In this document: one piece after another, positions 22,109-63,399 of the stretch | How positions within the stretch are numbered: the stretch's first letter is position 1 | Layout: each line of letters opens with the position of its first letter | Origin: Octopus sinensis | Taxonomy: Eukaryota | Direction of reading: 5' to 3' | Assembly: GCF_006345805.1 (NCBI RefSeq) | Contig: NC_042997.1 | Location: 27,528,001 to 27,592,000, forward strand | DNA length: 64,000 nucleotides | Position numbers and translations under genes: made by a program | Notes under the pieces: generated by a model | Database searches by the model: none | Seen by the model: only the letters and a program-made list of their open reading frames with translations | Told to the model about the DNA's origin: nothing

Positions 22109-22490
22109 GGAGGCGCAATGGCCCAGAGGTTAGGGCAGCAGACTCGCGGTCATAGGATCGCGGTTTCGATTCCCAGACCGGGCGTTGTGAGTGTTTATTG
22201 AGCGAAAACACCTAAAGCTCCACGAGGCTCCGACAGAGGATGCTGGCGATTCCTGCTGTACTCTTTCACCACAACTTTCTCTCACTCTTACTTCCTGTTT
22301 CTGTTGTACCTGTATTTCAAAGGGCCGGCCTTGTCACTCTCTGTGTCACGCTGAATATCCCCGAGAACTACGTTAAGGGTACACGTGTCTGTGGAGTGCT
22401 CAGCCACTTACACGTTAATTTCACGAGCAGGCTGTTCCGTTGATTCGGATCAACCGGAACCCTCGTCGTCGTAACCGAACGAGTGCTTCC
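22109..22490 (+). mobile_element. tRNA-derived SINE family A in the locus B intron
   Basis: 11-bp TSD ATATTGATTTA (22098-22108 and 22491-22501); the homologous site in the locus D intron is empty. Confidence 0.92.
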
Positions 22491-23200: not shown

Positions 23201-23491
23201 TTCACAGTTATCTATTAGAAAACAATTTAATCTTTCGTAATTTGGAGTGAATACATGTGTATGTGTGCGTGTGTGACAGACAGTGAGAGACAGAGAGAGG
23301 GAGAGGGAGAGAGAAAGTGATAGAGAACGAGGGAGCGAGTGAGTGAGTGAGTGAGTGAATGAGTGGTGGGTGAGTGAGTGTATATGTGCCATGGATGTAG
23401 TATATTATTCTCATATTTCTTCATTTATTTAGCTGTGGCTCATATTGGAATGTAATTACTGATTTCGACGTATATATTTCATATCACGCAG

Positions 23492-24022
23492 GTGCTCATC
23501 CAGGTTGTAATCTTCCTCCTCACCAACGTCGTATTGTTCATATCCTCGGCGTCAATTCCGACTCAATGTAAAATACCCAAGGATTTGAAAGTCCAATACG
23601 AGGAACTATCCAGCGCAGCGATCGGCAATAACTTTTTCCTACCAGCTGAAATGGCTCCAGCAGGAAGTGATCAACAGGAACTGACCGAAGGGGATAAAAC
23701 TTGCCCAACATCTTCCGTATCTACTGATATCATTCGTGAGCGTTCAACCTGCCCATGGTACCTGAAAATTACGCACAATTCCACATATTTTCCTTCATCA
23801 CGCAGAGAAGTCGTGTGTCGCTGTACAGAGTGTCTGGACTCTGACAGTAACCACCAATGTGTGATGGTTTATACTCCAATGACTGTCCTGAAACGTACAG
23901 CTCAATGCGTTGATGGACTGTACGTTTATAAACCAAGTGTCATCGAGGTGGCCACAGCTTGTGTGTGTGCACGGAAGGTCGATGTAATATCCGGAGGAAA
24001 TGAGGACGAATATGAGTCGTAA
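23492..24022 (+). CDS. IL17: IL-17-like cytokine locus B, exon 2 (181-aa spliced product)
   Basis: Signal VLIQVVIFLLTNVVLFISSA; RSTCPW, FP...EVVCRC..C, TVLKR and VATACVC IL-17 motifs; 10 Cys; NST sequon. Confidence 0.95.
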   Translation: MLIQVVIFLLTNVVLFISSASIPTQCKIPKDLKVQYEELSSAAIGNNFFLPAEMAPAGSDQQELTEGDKTCPTSSVSTDIIRERSTCPWYLKITHNSTYFPSSRREVVCRCTECLDSDSNHQCVMVYTPMTVLKRTAQCVDGLYVYKPSVIEVATACVCARKVDVISGGNEDEYES

Positions 24023-24096
24023 TATCGGCCAAAATCATCGAACATTCAAATGTGTGTAACACAAATGGTTTTCATAATGTTATGGAAGTTTAAGTA

Positions 24097-24111
24097 AACC
24101 ACTGTGTGGTT
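24097..24111 (+). promoter_or_regulatory. CDE-like 3'UTR stem-loop (AACCAC-UGU-GUGGUU)
   Basis: 6-bp stem with a Py-Pu-Py triloop; identical in C and D. Confidence 0.55.
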
Positions 24112-24190
24112 GCTATATGAAACTATATACGAAACATGCCCACACACAAAAACATACAATCGCAAATATGCGCTATCTCTCTATTTCTAC

Positions 24191-24237
<47 letters not shown>

Positions 24238-25299
24238 TCTCTTCTCACAGACACTCGGATATATATATGCGGTATGTATGCATATATATACATACACACA
24301 CACGCACACATACATGTATACAAATATATGTGTGTATATATAATTATGGGTATATTTACTTGTATATAAATATATATCTGAAAATACATACATACATTCA
24401 TAAATACATACTTTTTCATGCATACCTACATCTATACATACATACGTACATCGACAAAAAAATTTCTGTCTCCTAAATGCTGTTCAGACATATTTCTTGT
24501 AAATATTTTTTTTTTTTTGCCATTTTGTGAACTCCGAACGGGACTCCTGTATTACTGTCGTATTAATTTATTGCCAACATTTTCTTTTTTTATGTATATA
24601 TCTAAGCATATAGGAAGTTCCTTGAATATAAATACTTGGAACAGATATTGAAATATATTTTCCATTTACATGACATACACCTAACTTTAAATACTCCGAT
24701 CATCAAGATGTAATCCTCATTATACGAACAAACCATTCATAAATGTACAGATAATTGCACGCACATTCACCTACCCATGCCATTCTACTTCGTTGGCATT
24801 CTGTTGTATATAAACAAAAAGTAATTACAGATGACAGTTCTAATAATGAACAACATTTCATTAAAATTTGAGTAACATTTCAAAACTGTAAATAAAACTT
24901 TGATATTTCTATTTTTCCATAATGCAGATCATAAGACATATATGCTAATTTGTATCATATTTATTCCATTCTAATATTCTAATATTTTTTCTAATATTTT
25001 AATATCAATAAAAAATATTTTATCAATATCATAAACTGTCTTTTATGTTCTTATTTTCTTTCTCTTGCCTGAATAAAGCATGTAAAAACTTCAGTCACTG
25101 ACTGCAAGCCCAACTAAGCTTGAGTAAATGCACTAAAGCCTAAAATATGTAGTTAAAATTAATGAATCTGTTTTCTTGCTCCTTCGAGGAACGAAGGGCA
25201 CTTTAACACTGAACGTTTATACAGTTTAACCTCATTTGTATGCTTATGAAACAAGAATATGAAGAGCGCCTCATTTAATCCAGGTATGAATATGAGTGT

Positions 25300-25937
25300 G
25301 TGGAAGCACTCCGTCAGTTACGACGATGAGGGTTCCGGTTGATCCGAATCAACGGAACAGCCTGCTCGTGAAATTAACGTGTAAGTGGCTGAGCACTCCA
25401 CAGACACGTGTACCCTTAACGCAGTTCTCGGGGATATTCAGCGTGACACAGAGAGTGGACAAGGCTGGCCCTCTGAAATACAGGTACAACAGAAACAGGA
25501 AGTAAGAGTGAGAGAAAGTTGTGGTGAAAGAGGCGCGACGGTGCGGACAATATGGAAGCACTCGTTCGGTTACGACGACGAGGGTTCCGGTTAATCCGAA
25601 TCAACGGAACAGCCTGCTCGTGAAATTAACGTGTAAGTGGCTGAGCACTCCACAGACACGTGTACCCTTAACGTAGTTCTCGGGGATATTCAGCGTGACA
25701 CAGAGAGTGACAAGGCTGGCCCTTTGAAATACAGGTACAACAGAAACAGGAAGTAAGAGTGAGAGAAAGTTGTGGTGAAAGAGTACAGCAGGGATCACCA
25801 CCATCCCCTGCCGGAGCCTCGTGGAGCTTTAGGTGTTTTCGCTCAATAAACACTCACAACGCCCGGTCTGAGAATCGAAACCGCGATCCTACGACCGCGA
25901 GTCCGCTGCCCTAACCACTGGGCCATAGCGCCTCCAC
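25300..25937 (-). mobile_element. SINE family A with a duplicated 3' body
   Basis: Body repeated (25302-25555 and 25555-25800); near-TSD TGAATAT(G/C)AGTGT; the site is empty in the locus D flank (~62045). Confidence 0.88.
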
Positions 25938-26582
25938 TGAATATCAGTGTATTACCTTGCTCGCACGACACAGAATATACTGACCTTTCGCACGAACGAA
26001 ATTAGTCAAATATCCAAGAAATAGAAGAAAAATCGTTTTCAATTTGCTGAACGTGTTACGATGACAATACTTCAAGGAGGCTAAAAAAGAACAATGAAAA
26101 TTCTCAGAATCAACATTTTACAGTTTATTTACTCAAAGTATATTAAGAAATACCGCCGTAATTTACATGCCACCTACCAAGTCAGGAGTGCAGAATTTCA
26201 GATGTTACTTGACAATGTGCAAAAAACGGGAACAATAAATAAGCACCAAAGAATCCTATAAAACACTTAGAACATAAAAGTTTAGCTCCAGAACTCAAAT
26301 TATTCCTACACACAAATTAAGCAAATGCCTCATCAGCCAAATTCTATACGGAAAGTATACTTAGTAATTCGGTGATATAAATCAAATTCATAATATTCTC
26401 CTACAGCATAATATTCTCTATACCATAATATTCTCCTACAGCATAGCAGTATTGATGTTATTAGTATTAGCTCGTCCATCGTTGTTGATGATGACCAAAG
26501 AAATCAAATAGCAAAAGGACACGATGTACAGCTGCACTCTAATGACGGAATCAAGTAGAAAATAAAATATCTGTACGTATCA

Positions 26583-45109: not shown

Positions 45110-45496
45110 GGGAGGAAGCACTCCGTCGGTTACGACGACGAGTGTTCCGGTTGATCCGAATCAACGGAACAGCCTGCTCGTGAAATTAGCGTGTAAGTGG
45201 CTGAGCACTCCACAGACACGTGTACCCTTAACGTAGTTCTCGGGAATATTCAGCGTGACACAGAGAGTGACAAGGCCGGCCCTTTGAAATACAGATACAA
45301 CAGAAACAGGAAGTAAGAGTGAGAGAAAGTTGTGGTGAAAGAGTACAAGGGGGTCACCACCATCCCCTGCCGGAGCCTCGTGGAGCTTTAGGTGTTTTCG
45401 CTTAATAAACACTCACAACGCCCGGTCTGGGAATCGAAACCGCGATCCTATGACCGCGAGTCCGTTGCCCTAACCACTGGGCCATTGCGCCTCCAC
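45110..45496 (-). mobile_element. SINE family A upstream of locus C exon 2
   Basis: 10-bp TSD TGACAAAATA (45100-45109 and 45497-45506). Confidence 0.92.
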
Positions 45497-46140
45497 TGAC
45501 AAAATAACTCATTATGGTAATAATACATTTCAAATGTTCTCCATAATTCTTCAGTTTGCTATTTACTATCTTTCAAATTAAATATAACTCTAGCGCTTAG
45601 ACAGTCACATTTTGTCAAATTTCGTTGTTTACTTGCGCATTCATATAAGTATGGGTCAGTCACACCTACACCCATTATTATACTTCTCCATTGTAACTTT
45701 TACCTACTTGAAATACGGATATCAATAGCTGATTCAAGTCTTGTTGAAAATATCTCATTCATAAGTTTTCTCTACACATATTACCATACTTCTCCATTCT
45801 ACATTTTTTCTGCTTGAAATATGGATATCAACGGCTGTTGAAAATAACTCATTCATCAATTTTCTCTTACAAAATACACAGACATATTTCTCTTTCATTC
45901 CACACACTACAAAGAATGCCCTCTAATCTTTATTACACTGGTTTGAATATATATATGCCGCTGGGTATTTGAGAGAAGGAGAGATGGAGAGGGACGGAGG
46001 GGGAGGGAAATGGAAAGAGTGAGGGATTTTATGTGTGCTATAGGTGTAGTATATTATTCTTGGTTTCTCTCATTCGTTTAGCTGTGAGCTATGTTGAAAC
46101 GTAACTACTTATCTTAACATAAACATTTTATATCACGCAG

Positions 46141-46671
46141 GTTCTCATCCAGGCTGGAATTTTCCTCCTCACCGATGTCGTATTGTTCATGTCCTCTGCG
46201 TCAATTCCGACTCAATGTAAAATACCAAAAGTCTTGAAAGTCCAATACGAGGAACTATCCAGCGCAGCGATCGGCAATAACTTTTTCTTGCCAGCTGAAA
46301 TGGCTCCAGCGGGAAGTGACCAACAAGCACTGACCGAAGGGGATAAAACTTGCCCAACATCTTCTGTATCTACTGATATCATTCGCGATCGTTCAACCTG
46401 CCCATGGTACCTGAAAATTACCCACAATTCCACATATTTTCCTCCGTCACGCAGAGAAGTCGTGTGTCGTTGTACAGACTGTCTGGACTCTGACAGTAAC
46501 CACCAATGTGTGATCGTTTATACTCCAATGACTGTCCTGAAACGTACAGCTCAATGCGTTGATGGACTGTACGTTTATAAACCAAGTGCCATCGAGGTGG
46601 CCACAGCCTGTGTGCGCGCACGGAAAGTCGATGTAATATCCGGAGGAAATGAGGACGAATATGAGTCGTAA
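46141..46671 (+). CDS. IL17: IL-17-like locus C exon 2 (open frame; CxC changed to CVR; exon 1 not found, possibly a nascent pseudogene)
   Basis: Acceptor CACGCAG at 46140; 531 nt like B and D and closely similar to them; codon 46615-46617 is CGC where B and D have TGT. Confidence 0.85.
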   Translation, partial: VLIQAGIFLLTDVVLFMSSASIPTQCKIPKVLKVQYEELSSAAIGNNFFLPAEMAPAGSDQQALTEGDKTCPTSSVSTDIIRDRSTCPWYLKITHNSTYFPPSRREVVCRCTDCLDSDSNHQCVIVYTPMTVLKRTAQCVDGLYVYKPSAIEVATACVRARKVDVISGGNEDEYES

Positions 46672-46745
46672 TATCGGCCAAAATCAATGAACATTCAAAT
46701 GTGTGTAACACAAATGGTTTTCATAATGTTATGGAAGTTTAAGTA

Positions 46746-46760
46746 AACCACTGTGTGGTT
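46746..46760 (+). promoter_or_regulatory. CDE-like 3'UTR stem-loop, locus C
   Basis: AACCAC-TGT-GTGGTT. Confidence 0.55.
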
Positions 46761-46996
46761 GTTATATGAAACATATATGAAACATGCGTACAAACAAAAG
46801 CATAGAACCGTGCATATGAGAATTCTCGCTCTACCTATCTATCTATTTGTCTATCTCTCACTCTCTCTCTCTCACCTCTCTCTCTCTTTCTCTCACCTCT
46901 CTCACTTCTCTCTCTCTCTCTCTCTCTCTCTCACTTTCTTCATCTCACACACACACATACATATGTGTTACGCAGTCATATATATATAAATATGTA

Positions 46997-47032
<36 letters not shown>

Positions 47033-47036
<4 letters not shown>

Positions 47037-47362
47037 CGCATGGCTCAGTGGTTAGAGCGTCGAGCTTACGATCGCGAGGTTGTGAGCTCGAATCCCGGAC
47101 CGGGCTGGGTGTTGTGTTCTCGAGCAAGGCACTTTATTTCACGTTGCTCCTGTTCACTCAGCTGTAGAAATGAGTTGCGACGTCACTGGTGCCAAGCTGT
47201 ATCGACCTTTGTCTTTCCCTTGGATAACACTGATGGCGTGGAGAGGGGAGGCTGGTATGCATGGGCGACTGCTGGTCTTCCATAAACAACCGTGCCCGGA
47301 CTTGTGTCTAGGAGGGTAACTTTCTAGGTGCAATCCCATGGTCATTCATGACCGAAGGGGGT
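47033..47362 (+). mobile_element. tRNA-derived SINE family D
   Basis: GGCTCAGTGG A-box and GAGCTCGAATCC B-box-like; inverted near-identical partner at 48521. Confidence 0.9.
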
Positions 47363-57489: not shown

Positions 57490-58466
57490 TACACAAAAAT
57501 AGTTGATATATTTAATGCAAATAATGTATATATGTTTACATACAAAAAGGTCCGACTTACACAGAACAGAAACGATACCAGCAATTAAAACGGTCGAATA
57601 AGAGTTTTAAGTCAATTAGATTCAGAAAGCTGAATGATAAATATAATGTGACATTCGCTCATTGTTTGATTTATTTTATTTATAAAATGACAAACATTTC
57701 TGTTTACATTGTCAACGAAACAATCAAAGACGATAGCGGCATTATTGATACTGTTGGCTAGGTTGACGTCGTTACACGAGTAACAACGACAAATTTTTTG
57801 AGAATTTTTGGTCAATTGTGTTGTTCCTCAATATCTCCCCAGATATCTCACAAATTGAAATGTTGCAGTGATTGATATCCAATACCTTTACATCGATGTT
57901 TAAATTCAGAAAATAACGCGTTAACATAATAGGTTATTGTAAATATTCTCCACAATTGTTCAATTACTATTTTCTGCATTTCAATTTACATCTCTTGCAT
58001 TTAGACATAAACAGTTTGTCAAATTTAGTTGTTTACTGAGGAATTCATATAAGTATCAGGCTAGGCCATTTCCAACTGTTCATATTATACTTCACATTTG
58101 TAACTTTCCTACTTTAGATACAGATATAAACAGCTGATTCACGTCTTGTCGAGAATATTTCGTTCATTTGTTTTCATTTGTTTTCTCTTATAAAATACAC
58201 CAGCGCAGTTTACATTCGATCCACGCATTACGAGTGCCCTCTAATCTTTCATGAACACGAGTGAATACATACATGTGTGTGTGTATAAGTGGGTTCCTTT
58301 GTGTATAAGTCTGTGAGTTTGGGCATGTTTGTGTATTAGAGAGAGAGAGTGAATTTATGTGTGCTATAGATGTAATATATTATTCTTGATTTGTTTTATT
58401 CATTTAGCTGTGGGTCATATTGAATCGTAATTAGTCATCTTAACATAAACATTTTATTTTACGCAG

Positions 58467-58997
58467 GTTCTCCTCCAGGTTGTAATCTTCCTCCTCACCA
58501 ACGTCGTATTGTTCATATCCTCGGCGTCAATTCCGACTCAATGTAAAATACCAAACGATTTGAAAGTCCAATACGAGGAACTTTCCAGCGCAGCGATCGG
58601 CAATAACTTTTTCCTCCCAGCTGAAATGGCTCCAGCAGGAAGTGACCAACAGGAACGGACCGAAGGGGATAAAACTTGCCCAACATCTTCCGTATCTACA
58701 GATATCATTCGCGAGCGTTCAACCTGCCCATGGTACCTGAAAATTACGCACAATTCCACATATTTTCCTCCATCACGCAGAGAAGTCGTGTGTCGCTGTA
58801 CAGAGTGTCTGGACTCTGACAGTAACCACCAATGTGTGATGGTTTATACTACAATGACTGTCCTGAAACGTACAGCTCAATGTGTTGGTGGACTGTACGT
58901 TTATAAACCAAGTGTCATCCAAGTAGCCACAGCCTGTGTGTGTGCACGGAGAACCGATGTAATATCCAAAGGAAATGACAATGAATATGAGTCGTAA
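58467..58997 (+). CDS. IL17: IL-17-like cytokine locus D, exon 2 (181-aa spliced product)
   Basis: Acceptor TACGCAG at 58466; signal VLLQVVIFLLTNVVLFISSA; all 10 Cys retained. Confidence 0.95.
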   Translation, partial: VLLQVVIFLLTNVVLFISSASIPTQCKIPNDLKVQYEELSSAAIGNNFFLPAEMAPAGSDQQERTEGDKTCPTSSVSTDIIRERSTCPWYLKITHNSTYFPPSRREVVCRCTECLDSDSNHQCVMVYTTMTVLKRTAQCVGGLYVYKPSVIQVATACVCARRTDVISKGNDNEYES

Positions 58998-59044
58998 TAT
59001 CGGCCAAAATCATCAAACATTCAAATGTGTGTAACACAAAGCTT

Positions 59045-59086
59045 TTTCATAATGTTATGAAAGTTTAAGTAAACCACTGTGTGGTT
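59045..59086 (+). promoter_or_regulatory. Tandem 3'UTR stem-loops, locus D
   Basis: TTTCATA-ATGT-TATGAAA (59045-59062) and AACCAC-TGT-GTGGTT (59072-59086). Confidence 0.55.
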
Positions 59087-59184
59087 GTTATATGAAACTA
59101 TATACAAAACATGCACACACACAAAAATTATACAAGCGTACATATTTAAATGGGTGCTCTCGCGCTATTCATTTCTTCTCGCTA

Positions 59185-59224
<40 letters not shown>

Positions 59225-59354
59225 ACTCTCCCTCTCTCTTTCTGTGTATACATACTCACAAACACACACACACACAGACTCACAAATATAGACACAGACA
59301 CAAACACCCACACATACATACACATACACATATATCATACAAATATAAATATAT

Positions 59355-59402
<48 letters not shown>

Positions 59403-62596: not shown

Positions 62597-62982
62597 AGGA
62601 AGCACTCCGTCGGTTACGACGATGAGGGTTCCGGTTGATCCGAATAAACGGAACAGCCTGCTCGTGAAATTAACGTGTAAGTGGCTGAGCACTCCACAGA
62701 CACGTGTACCCTTAACGTAGTTCTCGGGGATATTCAGCGTGACACAGAGAGTGACAAGGCCGGCCCTTTGAAATACAGGTACAACAGAAACAGGAAGTAA
62801 GAGTGAGAGAAAGTTGTGGTGAAAGAGTACAGCAGGGATCACCACCATCCCTGCCGGAGCCTCGTGGAGCTTTTAGGTGTTTTCGCTCAATAAACACTCA
62901 CAACGCCCTGTCTGGGAATCGAAACCGCGATCCTATGACCGCGAGTCCGCTGCCCTAACCACTGGGCCATTGCGCCTCCACT
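62597..62982 (-). mobile_element. SINE family A
   Basis: 14-bp TSD AAATCGGGCACTAG (62583-62596 and 62983-62996). Confidence 0.93.
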
Positions 62983-63399
62983 AAATCGGGCACTAGTTAT
63001 CCTCTGAAACTGAAGGCGAGAAGTTACACCGTTCGCTTTTTCATTGTGACCCTACAATTCGACAGAGGGGTTGTCTGAATGGGTTGTGACTCTGACGGTG
63101 GTACATGAGAGTCTCTTCTGTGTAATTCGCCAGTTTTATGTCTCACCTGACACCCAGCTTCCGCTTATCGATCCACAAAACTATTTGCATGAAACAGTGA
63201 TCACGACTCGGGCAAGGCTTCCGTAGGCCATCTAAACCATGGTGAGTGTAGTCGACGACTCCCAAAACTTCTGTGAGTTAGTTTTCTCAACTTATACATG
63301 TGAATAATGGACGCTGTGGTCGGTATTCAATTCAATTCAATTTTTATTGGCTCAAAAAGCAAAAAAAAAAGGCCATGTAGGGGGACAGGGAGTTATGTA

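What the first reader, a model, noticed from the sequence alone, without database searches (positions are those of the whole stretch)
24086..24111. Positionally conserved 3'UTR element in all five IL-17 loci; CDE-like UGU-triloop hairpin in B/C/D
Seen: B (24097-24111), C (46746-46760) and D (59072-59086) carry AACCAC-UGU-GUGGUU 75 nt after the stop. It is preceded by AAGTTTAAGT. The divergent locus A (3808-3830) and pseudogene E (11267-11294) keep a recognisable AAG.YTAAG.A.A.CAC..TGT at about the same distance, although the neighbouring UTR does not align by eye. Known: mammalian Roquin and Regnase-1 bind short stems with pyrimidine-purine-pyrimidine triloops (constitutive decay elements) in cytokine mRNAs. 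Inference: cephalopod IL-17 mRNAs may be controlled by a Roquin/Regnase-type decay system, with loop changes (AAU in A, AGU in E) tuning stability per paralog.
Basis: partly seen in the sequence, partly recalled or inferred. Interest (0 to 1): 0.8.

Follow-up and report, generated by a model that had tools for sequence, protein, structure and literature searches.

The report
Octopus IL-17 3'UTR hairpin pair
Just after the stop codon of octopus interleukin-17 genes sit two small conserved RNA hairpins, one of which has the shape and loop letters of the "decay elements" that mammals use to keep inflammatory cytokine messages short-lived; protein binding and decay are still untested.

Summary
AACCAC-UGU-GUGGUU occurs exactly three times in the window, each 75 nt after the TAA of an IL-17 last exon (B, C, D). 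Degraded versions sit at the same place in A and in pseudogene E.

It is not a by-product of the B/C/D duplication. Of 14 further octopod IL-17 last exons that I fetched (Octopus sinensis, O. bimaculoides, O. vulgaris, Argonauta hians, one unnamed octopod), seven carry the same 5-6 bp triloop hairpin. Another four carry a degraded copy, and three have none.

In paralogs whose four-fold sites are only 51% identical, the stem is 78.5% identical. Loop positions 1-2 changed at least 10 times. Every loop in an intact gene is UGU, UAU, CAU, CGU or AAU, which is exactly the published Roquin CDE loop set. Only the pseudogene has AGU.

HP1 has real covariation.

Caveats:
- The stem of HP2, the reported hairpin, is conserved but does not covary.
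- There is no transcript evidence that the site lies in the mature 3'UTR.
- In locus A the hairpin is not stable.
- Several paralogs have lost it.
- Binding by Roquin or Regnase is untested.

Verdict: a plausible new CDE-type element within a two-hairpin 3'UTR module.

The parts
24097..24111 (+). HP2 in locus B: AACCAC-UGU-GUGGUU, a 6-bp Watson-Crick stem with a Y-R-U triloop and a C-G closing pair (the reported element).
   Evidence: It is the minimum-free-energy fold in a 25-nt context: -7.6 kcal/mol, z -2.49. It is also present in the centroid of the 118-nt UTR fold.
46746..46760 (+). HP2 in locus C, identical to the copy in B.
59072..59086 (+). HP2 in locus D, identical to the copy in B.
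3819..3833 (+). HP2 position in locus A: GACCAC-AAU-GUGAUU. A C.A mismatch at the third pair from the base (fourth from the loop) means the hairpin is not predicted to be stable.
   Evidence: Only a 3-bp fold at -0.4 kcal/mol is predicted. The O. bimaculoides ortholog has GUGGUU and a 5-bp stem.
11278..11292 (+). HP2 relic in pseudogene E: GAGCAC-AGU-GUAGUU, with a broken stem and a loop outside the CDE set.
   Evidence: Pseudogene status is shown.
24051..24063 (+). HP1 in locus B: UGUGU-GUA-ACACA, a 5-bp stem with an R-U-A triloop, 29 nt after the stop. This is a new observation.
   Evidence: It is present in the centroid of the UTR fold. Covariation across paralogs is shown.
46700..46712 (+). 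HP1 in locus C.
59026..59038 (+). HP1 in locus D.
3773..3785 (+). HP1 in locus A: GGCGU-GUA-AAGCU, with one G.A mismatch and one G.U pair. It is 13/13 identical to the O. bimaculoides ortholog.
11233..11245 (+). HP1 relic in pseudogene E: UCCAU-AUA-AAGCA, broken.
24086..24095 (+). Linear block AAGTTTAAGT just 5' of HP2 in B. The equivalents are C 46735-46744, D 59061-59070, A 3808-3817 (AAGCTTAAGT) and E 11267-11276 (AAGTCTAAGC).
   Evidence: It is only moderately conserved: mean pairwise identity of the 5' flank columns is 42-45% across lineages.
24023..24151 (+). The whole post-stop module in B: HP1, spacer, linear block, HP2 and an AU-rich tail. The equivalents are about 46672-46800 (C), 58998-59126 (D), 3750-3860 (A) and 11201-11310 (E).
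   Evidence: The multiple alignment of 19 loci aligns over this stretch. Between B and C or D, identity is 90-97% here, against 59-67% beyond about +130 and 73-77% in the intron. Paralog local-alignment z has a median of 6.4 here, against 0.03 for +116..+400.
23492..24022 (+). IL-17 last exon of locus B, which holds nearly the whole CDS. The acceptor ag is at 23490-23491 and the TAA at 24020-24022. The IL-17 coding matches of the other loci are C 46324-46671, D 58650-58997, A 3402-3749 and E 10841-11200 (disrupted).
   Evidence: Pfam IL17, tblastn, the sequence itself, and the jump in identity at 23492.

Best explanation
The reported hairpin (HP2) is one half of a conserved, sense-strand RNA module of about 110-130 nt that begins just after the stop codon of octopod IL-17 genes. 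The module contains four parts:
- HP1, a 5-bp stem with an R-U-A triloop, 23-51 nt after the stop.
- A spacer of about 30 nt that includes a loosely conserved AAGYTTAAGTA block.
- HP2, whose consensus is RACCAC-YRU-GUGGUU.
- An AU-rich tail, AUUAUAAUUUAC.

HP2 has the anatomy of a constitutive decay element. My preferred mechanism (inferred, not shown) is that the single Roquin orthologue of the octopus binds HP2 through its ROQ domain and recruits CCR4-NOT/decapping. The Regnase-1 orthologue may also cut the mRNA, so that IL-17 messages are short-lived unless signalling relieves the repression. HP1 would be a partner element, comparable to the second stem-loop next to the Roquin site in C. 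elegans ets-4.

What is shown: the sequences, their position, their conservation against a neutral yardstick, the restriction of loop states, and the covariation of HP1.

What is inferred: that the site is in the mature 3'UTR, which protein binds it, and what effect it has on mRNA stability.
For: 1. Position. Exact copies lie 75 nt after the stop in B, C and D. The family-specific motif occurs nowhere else on either strand in about 310 kb of fetched octopod DNA; it is found only after IL-17 stop codons.

2. Spread.
- Hairpins predicted to fold lie 60-97 nt after the stop in Argonauta hians L001 (AACCAC-UAU-GUGGUU), O. vulgaris L008 (two genes, GACCAC-CGU-GUGGUU), O. bimaculoides L009 (CAU), O. 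bimaculoides L004 (AAU), O. sinensis L012 (UAU) and octopod contig L003 (GAUCAC-AAU-GUGGUC).
- The triloop hairpin is the minimum-free-energy fold in all of these, at -4.5 to -8.1 kcal/mol.

3. Constraint.
- In paralog pairs with 38-73% protein identity, four-fold sites are 51% identical (643/1253).
- The first 115 nt after the stop still align (median z 6.4), whereas +116..+400 does not (median z 0.03).
- HP2 stem columns are 78.5% identical, flanks 42-56%, loop positions 1-2 40%, and loop position 3 100%.

4. Loop states.
- Loop position 1 changed at least 6 times, position 2 at least 4 times (all G<->A), and position 3 never.
- Every loop in an apparently intact gene is UGU, UAU, CAU, CGU or AAU.
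- That set equals the published ROQ-domain preference: 5'-YRU-3', plus AAU as a lower-affinity active loop, on stems of 6-8 bp.
- UGU with a C-G closing pair is the form used in all Roquin-RNA crystal structures.
- The only loop outside the set (AGU) is in pseudogene E, where the stem has also decayed.

5. RNA-level signal next door.
- HP1 pairs in 85.3% of cells against 73.3% in shuffles (0/500 shuffles reach it).
- 4 of its 5 pairs show changes on both sides, in 8 cells (0/500); slid controls give 24-53%.
- It has 5 G.U cells and 0 C.A cells, so the structure is specific to the sense strand.

6. Chance. A generic hairpin of 6 Watson-Crick pairs with a YRU loop is expected only about 4 times per 64 kb counting both strands.

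7. Precedent.
- In C. elegans, a 115-nt stretch of the ets-4 3'UTR holds adjacent stem-loops. One binds RLE-1/Roquin through its ROQ domain and the other is the REGE-1/Regnase-1 cleavage element; both are required.
- Invertebrates generally have one rc3h1 gene and one zc3h12 gene.
Against: - I have no transcript evidence. The Logan contigs L003 and L005 are genomic, not cDNA; the ORF called in L003 starts at a TTG inside a polypyrimidine-tract/CAG acceptor. In locus A an ATTAAA sits 43 nt after the stop, upstream of HP2.
- HP2 shows no covariation beyond what column conservation gives: 89.6% of cells paired against 88.7% in shuffles, with 185/500 shuffles as high. RNAalifold predicts no consensus structure for either short alignment. 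Only L003 has compensatory-type changes (A-U to G-C, and C-G to U.G).
- The stem sequence is more conserved than purely shape-based ROQ recognition would require.
- The strict TNF-type consensus (three Y-R pairs at the top of the stem, core UCYRYGA) is not met. The top of the stem here is C-G, A-U, C-G.
- The element is dispensable in many paralogs.
  - It is absent in L006, L010a and L011, overwritten by microsatellites in the last two.
  - It is weakened or broken in A, L002, L005, L007 and L010b.
- Between A and its O. bimaculoides ortholog, HP2 took 2 changes in 15 nt, while the module as a whole is 93.7% identical and the intron 89.5%.
- Identity among B, C and D is no evidence of function. 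The exon plus module were homogenised together: four-fold sites are 88-91% identical and the module 90.5-94.8%.
- Loop position 3 plus the 3' arm spells TGTGGTT, a RUNX-type DNA site.
- HP1's GUA loop is not a known Roquin loop.
Confidence: 0.4

Rival explanations
1. The module is a post-transcriptional element read by something other than Roquin or Regnase. Candidates are another stem-loop-binding protein, or linear sites for microRNAs or AU-rich-element proteins that happen to overlap a palindrome.
For: - Conservation extends beyond the hairpin into the AAGYTTAAGTA block and the AUUAUAAUUUAC tail; several copies of the tail contain AUUUA.
- The HP2 stem sequence itself is conserved at 78.5%, more than shape recognition needs.
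- L007 and L010b keep the linear flanks while the stem is broken.
- HP1, which carries the best structural evidence, has a conserved GUA loop (83.8% identity) that is not a Roquin motif.
- From my own knowledge, the GUGAUU variant in A and L002 creates UGUGAU, a K-box-like 6-mer match to the miR-2 family seed.
Against: - Both arms are equally conserved and complementary.
- Loop positions 1-2 evolve freely while staying within YR/AA, which a linear site spanning the loop would not allow.
- No specific alternative factor is indicated, and Rfam has no matching family.
Confidence: 0.25
2. The conserved block works at the DNA level as a transcription-factor site downstream of the gene. It could be a RUNX-type site (TGTGGTT, formed by loop position 3 plus the 3' arm) or a palindromic ACCAC-N3-GTGGT site for a dimeric factor.
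For: - TGTGGTT is intact in every copy that also has an intact hairpin.
- Copies with an AAU loop place TGTGGT on both strands.
- An invariant T at loop position 3 with free positions 1-2 is what a half-site plus spacer would give.
- L005 keeps TGTGGTT while its 5' arm is destroyed.
- There is no proof that the site is transcribed into mature mRNA.
- From my own knowledge, mammalian RUNX1 regulates Il17 transcription.
Against: - A single RUNX site does not explain the equal conservation of the 5' arm, and in most copies the 5' arm read on the other strand gives AGTGGT or GGTGGT, not YGYGGT.
- The palindrome is asymmetric, because loop position 1 is not fixed as A.
- The changes tolerated in intact copies are RNA-type: A/G opposite U at the basal pair, and C to U opposite G and U to C opposite G in L003.
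- The adjacent HP1 shows sense-strand covariation with G.U pairs, so the region is under RNA-level constraint.
- TGTGGTT is common in the window, with 16 copies against 11 expected.
Confidence: 0.12
3. The block has no function. It is residual homology of a young, gene-converting family, and the palindrome and its CDE-like loop are coincidence.
For: - B, C and D were homogenised as exon plus 130 nt, and the module is no more conserved than four-fold sites among them.
- HP2 shows no significant covariation.
- The element is lost or broken in about half of the loci.
- HP2 took 2 changes in 15 nt between one pair of orthologs.
- Four-fold sites between paralogs are not saturated, at 51% identity.
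Against: - Stem identity is 78.5%, against 51% at four-fold sites and 40% at loop positions 1-2 directly between the two arms.
- There were at least 10 loop changes at positions 1-2 and none at position 3.
- The region beyond +115 is unalignable in the same pairs.
- HP1 covaries.
- The element is retained in Argonauta.
- It has decayed in the one pseudogene.
Confidence: 0.13

Closest known systems
Roquin constitutive decay element (CDE) of mammalian TNF, ICOS and CSF3 mRNAs, and the relaxed CDE consensus of Braun et al. 2018
   Same: Both are a single short hairpin downstream of the stop codon of a pro-inflammatory cytokine gene. Both have a 6-bp stem and a triloop from the YRU set. In B, C and D the loop is UGU with a C-G closing pair, the same as the TNF CDE used in the crystal structures. 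AAU variants match the low-affinity CDE loop.
   Different: - The apical stem is C-G/A-U/C-G, not three Y-R pairs, so there is no 3' purine stack and the TNF core UCYRYGA is not matched.
- Most copies have a terminal G.U pair, which the relaxed genome scan excluded.
- The stem sequence is conserved rather than free.
- The host is a mollusc.
- Binding and decay are untested.
UCP3 tandem CDE and other multi-stem-loop Roquin targets
   Same: Two triloop hairpins lie close together in one 3'UTR. In UCP3 both are needed for efficient Roquin binding. Here HP1 and HP2 lie 30-35 nt apart and are conserved together.
   Different: HP1's loop is G/A-U-A, which is not YRU and was not among the loops enriched in the ROQ-domain binding assay. 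HP1 has only 5 bp, a length reported to work significantly less well.
C. elegans ets-4 3'UTR: an ADE bound by RLE-1/Roquin next to the RCE cleaved by REGE-1/Regnase-1
   Same: This is the invertebrate precedent. Two adjacent stem-loops within about 115 nt of 3'UTR have a division of labour between a Roquin-binding loop and a second stem-loop. The size and layout resemble the HP1 + HP2 module.
   Different: The nematode Roquin site is a hexaloop ADE, not a triloop CDE. Its target is a transcription factor, not a cytokine. Nothing here shows cleavage at HP1.
Regnase-1 target stem-loops (Y-R-Y triloops, for example in Il6)
   Same: Both are Y-R-Y triloops on a short stem in the 3'UTR of a cytokine mRNA.
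   Different: Recognition by Regnase-1 is less well defined. AAU loops fall outside Y-R-Y. No cleavage data exist for this element.
RUNX/CBF DNA-binding site TGTGGTT
   Same: An exact heptamer match is formed by the last loop base plus the 3' arm.
   Different: It does not explain the conserved 5' arm or the complementarity of the arms. The heptamer is common in the window.

Membership tests
Roquin CDE (relaxed consensus, Braun 2018 / sRBNS 2024) | Stem of 6-8 base pairs | tested here: met
   The stem is 6 bp, extendable to 7-8, in B, C, D, L001, L003, L008 (two genes), L009 and L012. It is 5 bp in L004. The feature is not met in window loci A (3 bp) and E.
Roquin CDE (relaxed consensus, Braun 2018 / sRBNS 2024) | Trinucleotide loop 5'-YRU-3' (YRN tolerated; AAU as a lower-affinity variant) | tested here: met
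   The loops are UGU, UAU, CAU, CGU and AAU in all 15 copies that belong to apparently intact genes. AGU occurs only in pseudogene E. Loop position 3 is U in 16 of 16 copies.
Roquin CDE (relaxed consensus, Braun 2018 / sRBNS 2024) | Watson-Crick stem without G.U pairs (as used in the genome-wide scan) | tested here: inconclusive
   B, C, D and L001 are entirely Watson-Crick. Most other copies have a G.U pair at the basal sixth position, and L003 has an internal U.G pair. Published work found that wobble pairs reduce activity but do not abolish it.
Roquin CDE (relaxed consensus, Braun 2018 / sRBNS 2024) | Located in the 3'UTR of the mature mRNA | tested here: inconclusive
   The hairpin lies 60-97 nt after the stop. 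In B, C and D no AATAAA or ATTAAA occurs before +672. No cDNA was available, and L003 and L005 proved to be genomic. Locus A has an ATTAAA at +43.
Roquin CDE (relaxed consensus, Braun 2018 / sRBNS 2024) | Evolutionary conservation of the hairpin | tested here: met
   The hairpin is conserved across paralogs of 38-73% protein identity and across Octopus and Argonauta. The stem is 78.5% identical against 51% at four-fold sites. Covariation, however, is not significant.
Roquin CDE (relaxed consensus, Braun 2018 / sRBNS 2024) | Bound by the ROQ domain and confers Roquin-dependent mRNA decay | not testable with these tools
   This needs EMSA or ITC and reporter decay assays.
Roquin CDE (relaxed consensus, Braun 2018 / sRBNS 2024) | The host encodes Roquin with an intact ROQ domain | not tested
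The literature states that invertebrates carry one rc3h1 and one zc3h12 gene. No paper in the library links Roquin with octopus.
Strict TNF-type CDE (Leppek 2013 consensus) | Three Y-R base pairs at the top of the stem forming a 3' purine stack; core UCYRYGA | tested here: not met
   The top of the stem is C-G, A-U, C-G, which gives the core ACYRUGU. Only the closing C-G pair matches.
Roquin ADE (alternative decay element) | U-rich hexaloop (GUUYUA-like) on a stem | tested here: not met
   HP1 and HP2 are both triloops. L011 has a 4-bp hairpin with the hexaloop GCAAUG at the HP1 position, which does not fit the ADE consensus.
Regnase-1 target stem-loop | Stem-loop with a Y-R-Y triad in the loop | tested here: met
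   UGU, UAU, CAU and CGU loops meet this. AAU loops do not.
Regnase-1 target stem-loop | Endonucleolytic cleavage by the PIN domain | not testable with these tools
   This needs an in vitro cleavage assay or degradome data.
RUNX DNA site | Core TGTGGT(T) / YGYGGT | tested here: met
   The core is present on the + strand in all copies with an intact 3' arm. The heptamer is common, with 16 copies in the window against 11 expected. Occupancy cannot be tested here.
Any curated RNA family (Rfam 15) | A hit at the gathering score | tested here: not met
   There were no hits in the window at the gathering threshold. Over 24000-24200 only chance-level matches appeared (E 2-10).

The most novel reading that the evidence does not exclude
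The whole expanded IL-17 family of octopods carries a two-hairpin 3'UTR switch. HP2 would be a true Roquin/Regnase decay element, and HP1 a previously undescribed partner stem-loop with an R-U-A triloop and a covarying stem, for example the cleavage or co-factor site. If so, stem-loop-mediated decay of inflammatory cytokine mRNAs is either ancestral to bilaterians or arose independently in a mollusc. Paralogs would then be graded in mRNA half-life by loop identity (YRU against AAU), by stem mismatches, and by outright loss of the element.
Probability: 0.27. Interest if true: 0.75.

Novelty: new member of a known kind. Interest (0 to 1): 0.6.

Why it matters
Post-transcriptional restraint of inflammatory cytokines by Roquin and Regnase is central to mammalian immune homeostasis. 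Outside vertebrates it is documented for only one non-immune target, in C. elegans. Octopods have an unusually large IL-17 family and no adaptive immunity.

A conserved CDE-type hairpin in these genes would connect an ancient cytokine family to an ancient RNA-decay machine in a lophotrochozoan. It would also give a concrete, short, mutable element to test, using 15-nt RNA oligos, the ROQ domain and reporter assays. The family offers a natural allelic series: five loop variants, mismatched stems and losses.

HP1 is a separate lead. It is a covarying triloop hairpin with a conserved GUA loop and no known reader. In the papers I could search, nothing connects Roquin or CDEs with molluscan IL-17.

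Tried and rejected
- I first treated Logan contigs L003 and L005 as spliced transcripts proving that the element lies in the UTR. I rejected this. The ORF called in L003 starts at a TTG inside an intron end (ttttctttttttaccgtacag|G), so the contig is genomic.
- RNAalifold on the 45-nt HP2 alignment and the 30-nt HP1 alignment returned no consensus structure. These hairpins are too short and weak at 37 C, and broken copies were included. I used explicit pair counting instead.
- Rfam gave nothing at the gathering score across the window, and only noise at E<=10 on the UTR.
- I tried to reach squid, nautilus or bivalve IL-17 loci.
  - A profile search returned only octopod proteins.
  - A metagenome-contig scan found none.
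- I tried ortholog footprinting of A against its O. bimaculoides ortholog. Divergence is too low (about 10%) to be informative.
- I considered a histone-type 3' stem-loop and rejected it. That element has a 4-nt loop and a different consensus, and it sits at the 3'-processing site.
- I considered a 5' splice-site reading of AAGTAA and rejected it, because no GT follows the AG in most copies.
- I considered an ADAR editing substrate and rejected it, because 5-6 bp is far too short.
- I considered a transposon-borne repeat and rejected it, because the motif occurs only after IL-17 stop codons in 310 kb.
- I considered derivation of HP2 from the coding segment AACCAC-CAA-TGTGTG-ATG-GTT at 23851-23871. 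The resemblance is real, but I judged it coincidental and did not pursue it.
- No tRNA gene is present.
Full report
**1. What is in the window**

The 15-mer AACCACTGTGTGGTT occurs with no mismatch exactly three times, at 24097-24111, 46746-46760 and 59072-59086, all on the + strand. Allowing up to 3 mismatches gives 7 matches against 1.85 expected, and none of 100 shuffles reaches 7.

Each copy starts 75 nt after a TAA that ends a long ORF. The ORFs of B and A match Pfam IL17, with E values of 9e-14 and 6e-8. The closest proteins are IL-17-like proteins of Octopus vulgaris, O. sinensis, O. bimaculoides, Amphioctopus and Argonauta. The A protein is 100% identical to an O. sinensis protein. tblastn finds five IL-17 last exons in the window: A, E, B, C and D.

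AAGTTTAAGT precedes the hairpin at 24086-24095. Locus A has AAGCTTAAGTAGACCACAATGTGATT from 3808. Locus E has AAGTCTAAGCAGAGCACAGTGTAGTT from 11267.

E is a pseudogene. It has a 46-nt deletion that removes the conserved C-V..LKRT segment, an insertion of about 85 nt of microsatellite, and stops in every frame.

**2.

The UTRs do align. MAFFT of the first 125-160 nt after the stop, first for the five loci and then for 19 loci, shows three conserved blocks.

The first block, 23-51 nt after the stop, is itself a hairpin, which I call HP1. It reads UGCGU-GUA-ACGCA in several paralogs and UGUGU-GUA-ACACA in B, C and D (24051-24063, 46700-46712, 59026-59038). It reads UGUGC-GUA-GCACA in an O. vulgaris gene, UGCAU-GUA-AUGCA in Argonauta, and UGCGU-AUA-AUGCA in an O. 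sinensis gene.

Explicit pair counting on 16 sequences gave these results:
- 85.3% of cells are paired, against 73.3% in column shuffles (0 of 500 shuffles as high).
- 4 of the 5 pairs show changes on both sides, in 8 cells (0 of 500).
- Slid-partner controls give 24-53%.

All five wobble cells are G.U and none is C.A, so the structure is specific to the sense strand. The HP1 loop is conserved (83.8% mean pairwise identity) while its stem varies (60.6%). That is the signature of a structural stem presenting a loop that some factor recognises.

The tool warns that related sequences can beat shuffles without any structure, so I rate this as good but not conclusive evidence.

**3. Is the reported hairpin (HP2) more than the B/C/D duplication?**

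Among B, C and D it carries no independent weight.
- Identity is 73-77% in the last 120 nt of the intron.
- It jumps to 92-98% at the exon boundary (23492).
- It stays at 90-97% to about +130 after the stop, then drops to 59-67%.
- Four-fold sites are 88-91% identical, and the module is 90.5-94.8%.

The exon and the module were therefore homogenised together, and the module is no better conserved than synonymous sites.

The informative comparison is with distant paralogs. I fetched 12 places encoding diverse octopod IL-17 proteins and found 14 further last exons in them.

HP2 is present and predicted to fold in seven of them (folds of -4.5 to -8.1 kcal/mol, with the triloop hairpin as the minimum-free-energy structure):

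| Locus | Species | HP2 |
|---|---|---|
| L001 | Argonauta hians | AACCAC-UAU-GUGGUU |
| L008 (two genes) | O. vulgaris | GACCAC-CGU-GUGGUU |
| L009 | O. bimaculoides | GACCAC-CAU-GUGGUU |
| L012 | O. sinensis | GACCAC-UAU-GUGGUU |
| L003 | unnamed octopod | GAUCAC-AAU-GUGGUC |
| L004 | O. bimaculoides (ortholog of A) | CACCAC-AAU-GUGGUU |

It is recognisable but weakened or broken in window A, in L002 (the same C.A mismatch as A), in L005, in L007 (the second Argonauta gene) and in L010b. It is absent in L006, L010a and L011. In the last two a microsatellite begins where HP2 should be.

That condition is not met, so the element survives the test.

**4. Is that conservation more than shared ancestry?**

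For paralog pairs with 38-73% protein identity, four-fold degenerate sites are 51% identical (643/1253). Local alignment of the first 115 nt after the stop has a median z of 6.4, against 0.03 for +116..+400.

Within the 45-nt window, taking one sequence per lineage, mean pairwise identities are as follows:

| Columns | Mean pairwise identity |
|---|---|
| 12 stem columns | 78.5% |
| Loop positions 1-2 | 40% |
| Loop position 3 | 100% |
| Flanks | 42-56% |

On a tree of the last exons, loop position 1 changed at least 6 times and position 2 at least 4 times (all G<->A). Position 3 never changed.

The family motif occurs nowhere else on either strand in about 310 kb of fetched sequence. A generic hairpin of 6 Watson-Crick pairs with a YRU loop is expected about 4 times per 64 kb counting both strands.

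The weak point is covariation. HP2 pairs in 89.6% of cells, but column shuffles give 88.7% (185/500 as high). Only L003 has compensatory-type changes. HP2 is a conserved palindrome, and its RNA nature is inferred from three things: the tolerated G.U-type changes, the loop pattern, and the covarying HP1 about 33 nt upstream.

**5. Comparison with the known element**

Published definitions:
[quoted passage not shown] A 5-bp stem works significantly less well. Any Watson-Crick closing pair is tolerated, and G.U pairs reduce activity. All crystal structures use UGU with a C-G closing pair (PMC6294493).
- High-throughput binding with the ROQ domain enriched only the four YRU loops, plus AAU as a lower-affinity loop that is still active in mRNA degradation (PMC11609897).
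- Regnase-1 binds Y-R-Y triloop stem-loops that overlap those of Roquin. The original TNF core is UCYRYGA (PMC13732794).

The octopod loops in apparently intact genes are UGU, UAU, CAU, CGU and AAU. These are the four YRU loops plus AAU, and nothing else. The one loop outside the set (AGU) is in the pseudogene.

Transition bias explains part of it. The invariant U at position 3 and the absence of G at position 1 are not explained that way.

The strict TNF consensus is not met, because the top of the stem is C-G/A-U/C-G. HP1's GUA loop is not a Roquin loop.

An invertebrate precedent for a two-stem-loop arrangement exists. In C. elegans ets-4, a 115-nt stretch of 3'UTR carries a Roquin-binding ADE next to the Regnase cleavage element, and both are required (PMC9371910). 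Invertebrates generally have one rc3h1 gene and one zc3h12 gene (PMC11172303).

I found no paper linking Roquin or CDEs with molluscan IL-17. Rfam has no matching family.

**6. What remains unproven**

- I have no cDNA. I first read L003 as a spliced transcript, but its ORF starts at a TTG inside a polypyrimidine tract and CAG acceptor, so it is genomic.
- That the module lies in the mature 3'UTR therefore rests on two things. It is close to the stop, and B, C and D have no AATAAA or ATTAAA before +672 to +913. In locus A an ATTAAA at +43 could in principle end the mRNA before HP2. The orthologs have ATTGAA there.
- I could not reach squid or bivalve IL-17 loci.

**7. Rivals**

- **(a) Another RNA-binding protein or linear sites.** The conserved flanks, the conserved stem sequence and HP1's foreign loop all leave room for this.
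- **(b) A DNA-level site.** Loop position 3 plus the 3' arm spells TGTGGTT, the RUNX core, and AAU-loop copies are palindromic for it. This would explain the fixed T and the free positions 1-2. It does not explain the equally conserved 5' arm, the RNA-type tolerated changes or HP1's covariation. The heptamer is also common in the window, with 16 copies against 11 expected.
- **(c) No function.** This is supported by frequent loss, by two changes in 15 nt between A and its ortholog, and by the lack of covariation. It is opposed by the rate contrast in section 4.

**8. Verdict**

- The Roquin/Regnase reading is partly supported. Every feature of the relaxed CDE that can be checked from sequence alone is met in B, C, D and seven other genes. 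The strict consensus is not met. The biochemical features cannot be tested here.
- The "tuning by loop" idea is not supported for A (a stem mismatch, with no predicted hairpin) or for E (a dead gene). It is conceivable family-wide, because AAU is a known weaker loop.
- I file this as a new candidate member of a known kind of element, with HP1 as an additional unexplained lead.

Noticed in passing
window 23372-24271 against 58347-59250 and 46019-46893: Among B, C and D, high identity (90-98%) is confined to the last exon plus about 130 nt after the stop. It has sharp edges, one exactly at the splice acceptor (23492) and one near 24151. The adjoining intron is 73-77% identical and the downstream flank 59-67%. 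Four-fold sites are 88-91% identical. This looks like gene conversion of the exon and proximal UTR as a unit; an RNA-templated conversion would also give such edges.
   Followed up: partly
window 3300-3749 against L004: Between locus A and its O. bimaculoides ortholog, the coding exon is less conserved (84.7%) than the intron (89.5%) or the 3' module (93.7%). The C-termini also differ, with a different stop position. The protein is evolving fast or under relaxed constraint.
   Followed up: no
window 47035-47100; also 23176, 25908, 44519, 45467, 48828, 50741, 62952: tRNA-like heads (GGCTCAGTGGTTAGAGC...GGTTCGAATCC type) occur 8 times, against 0.01 expected. ARAGORN and Rfam call none of them a tRNA. 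They are presumably tRNA-derived SINEs.
   Followed up: partly
window 22109-22490 and 25554-25940; copies at 45114-45499 and 62598-62987: A repeat of about 385 bp (95-97% identical between copies) flanks locus B in inverted orientation and recurs near C and D. It is a transposon or part of the duplication architecture.
   Followed up: no
window 24180-24470, 46830-47030, 59180-59400, 3900-4060; L010 4290 onward; L011 17540 onward: Every IL-17 module is followed within about 130-160 nt by long (CT)n, (CA)n, (TA)n or (TATG)n microsatellites. In L010a and L011 the microsatellite starts where HP2 should be, so microsatellite growth appears to be the way the element is lost.
   Followed up: partly
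window 23851-23871 (also 46500-46520 and 58826-58846): The coding segment AAC CAC CAA TGT GTG ATG GTT (N-H-Q-C-V-M-V) contains HP2's 15 letters in order, with two codon-sized gaps. This is probably coincidence, but a coding-derived origin of the palindrome was not excluded.
   Followed up: no
window 3826-3831 (A); L002 14850-14855: The G-to-A change that breaks the HP2 stem in A and L002 creates UGUGAU. From my own knowledge this is a K-box-like 6-mer complementary to the miR-2 family seed. It was not tested against octopus miRNAs.
   Followed up: no
window 3792-3797: Locus A has ATTAAA 43 nt after its stop, upstream of HP2. The O. bimaculoides ortholog and L005 have ATTGAA at that position. 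If this site is used, the mRNA of A would lack HP2.
   Followed up: no
L002 14819-14826: In this paralog the HP1 position reads TGACGTCA, a perfect CRE-type palindrome. It replaces the usual GUA-loop hairpin.
   Followed up: no
window 12285-12299 and 12469-12483 (- strand): Two identical hairpins fitting the CDE consensus (GTCGAT-TAT-ATCGAC) lie 184 nt apart downstream of pseudogene E. They are likely part of a local tandem or dispersed repeat.
   Followed up: no
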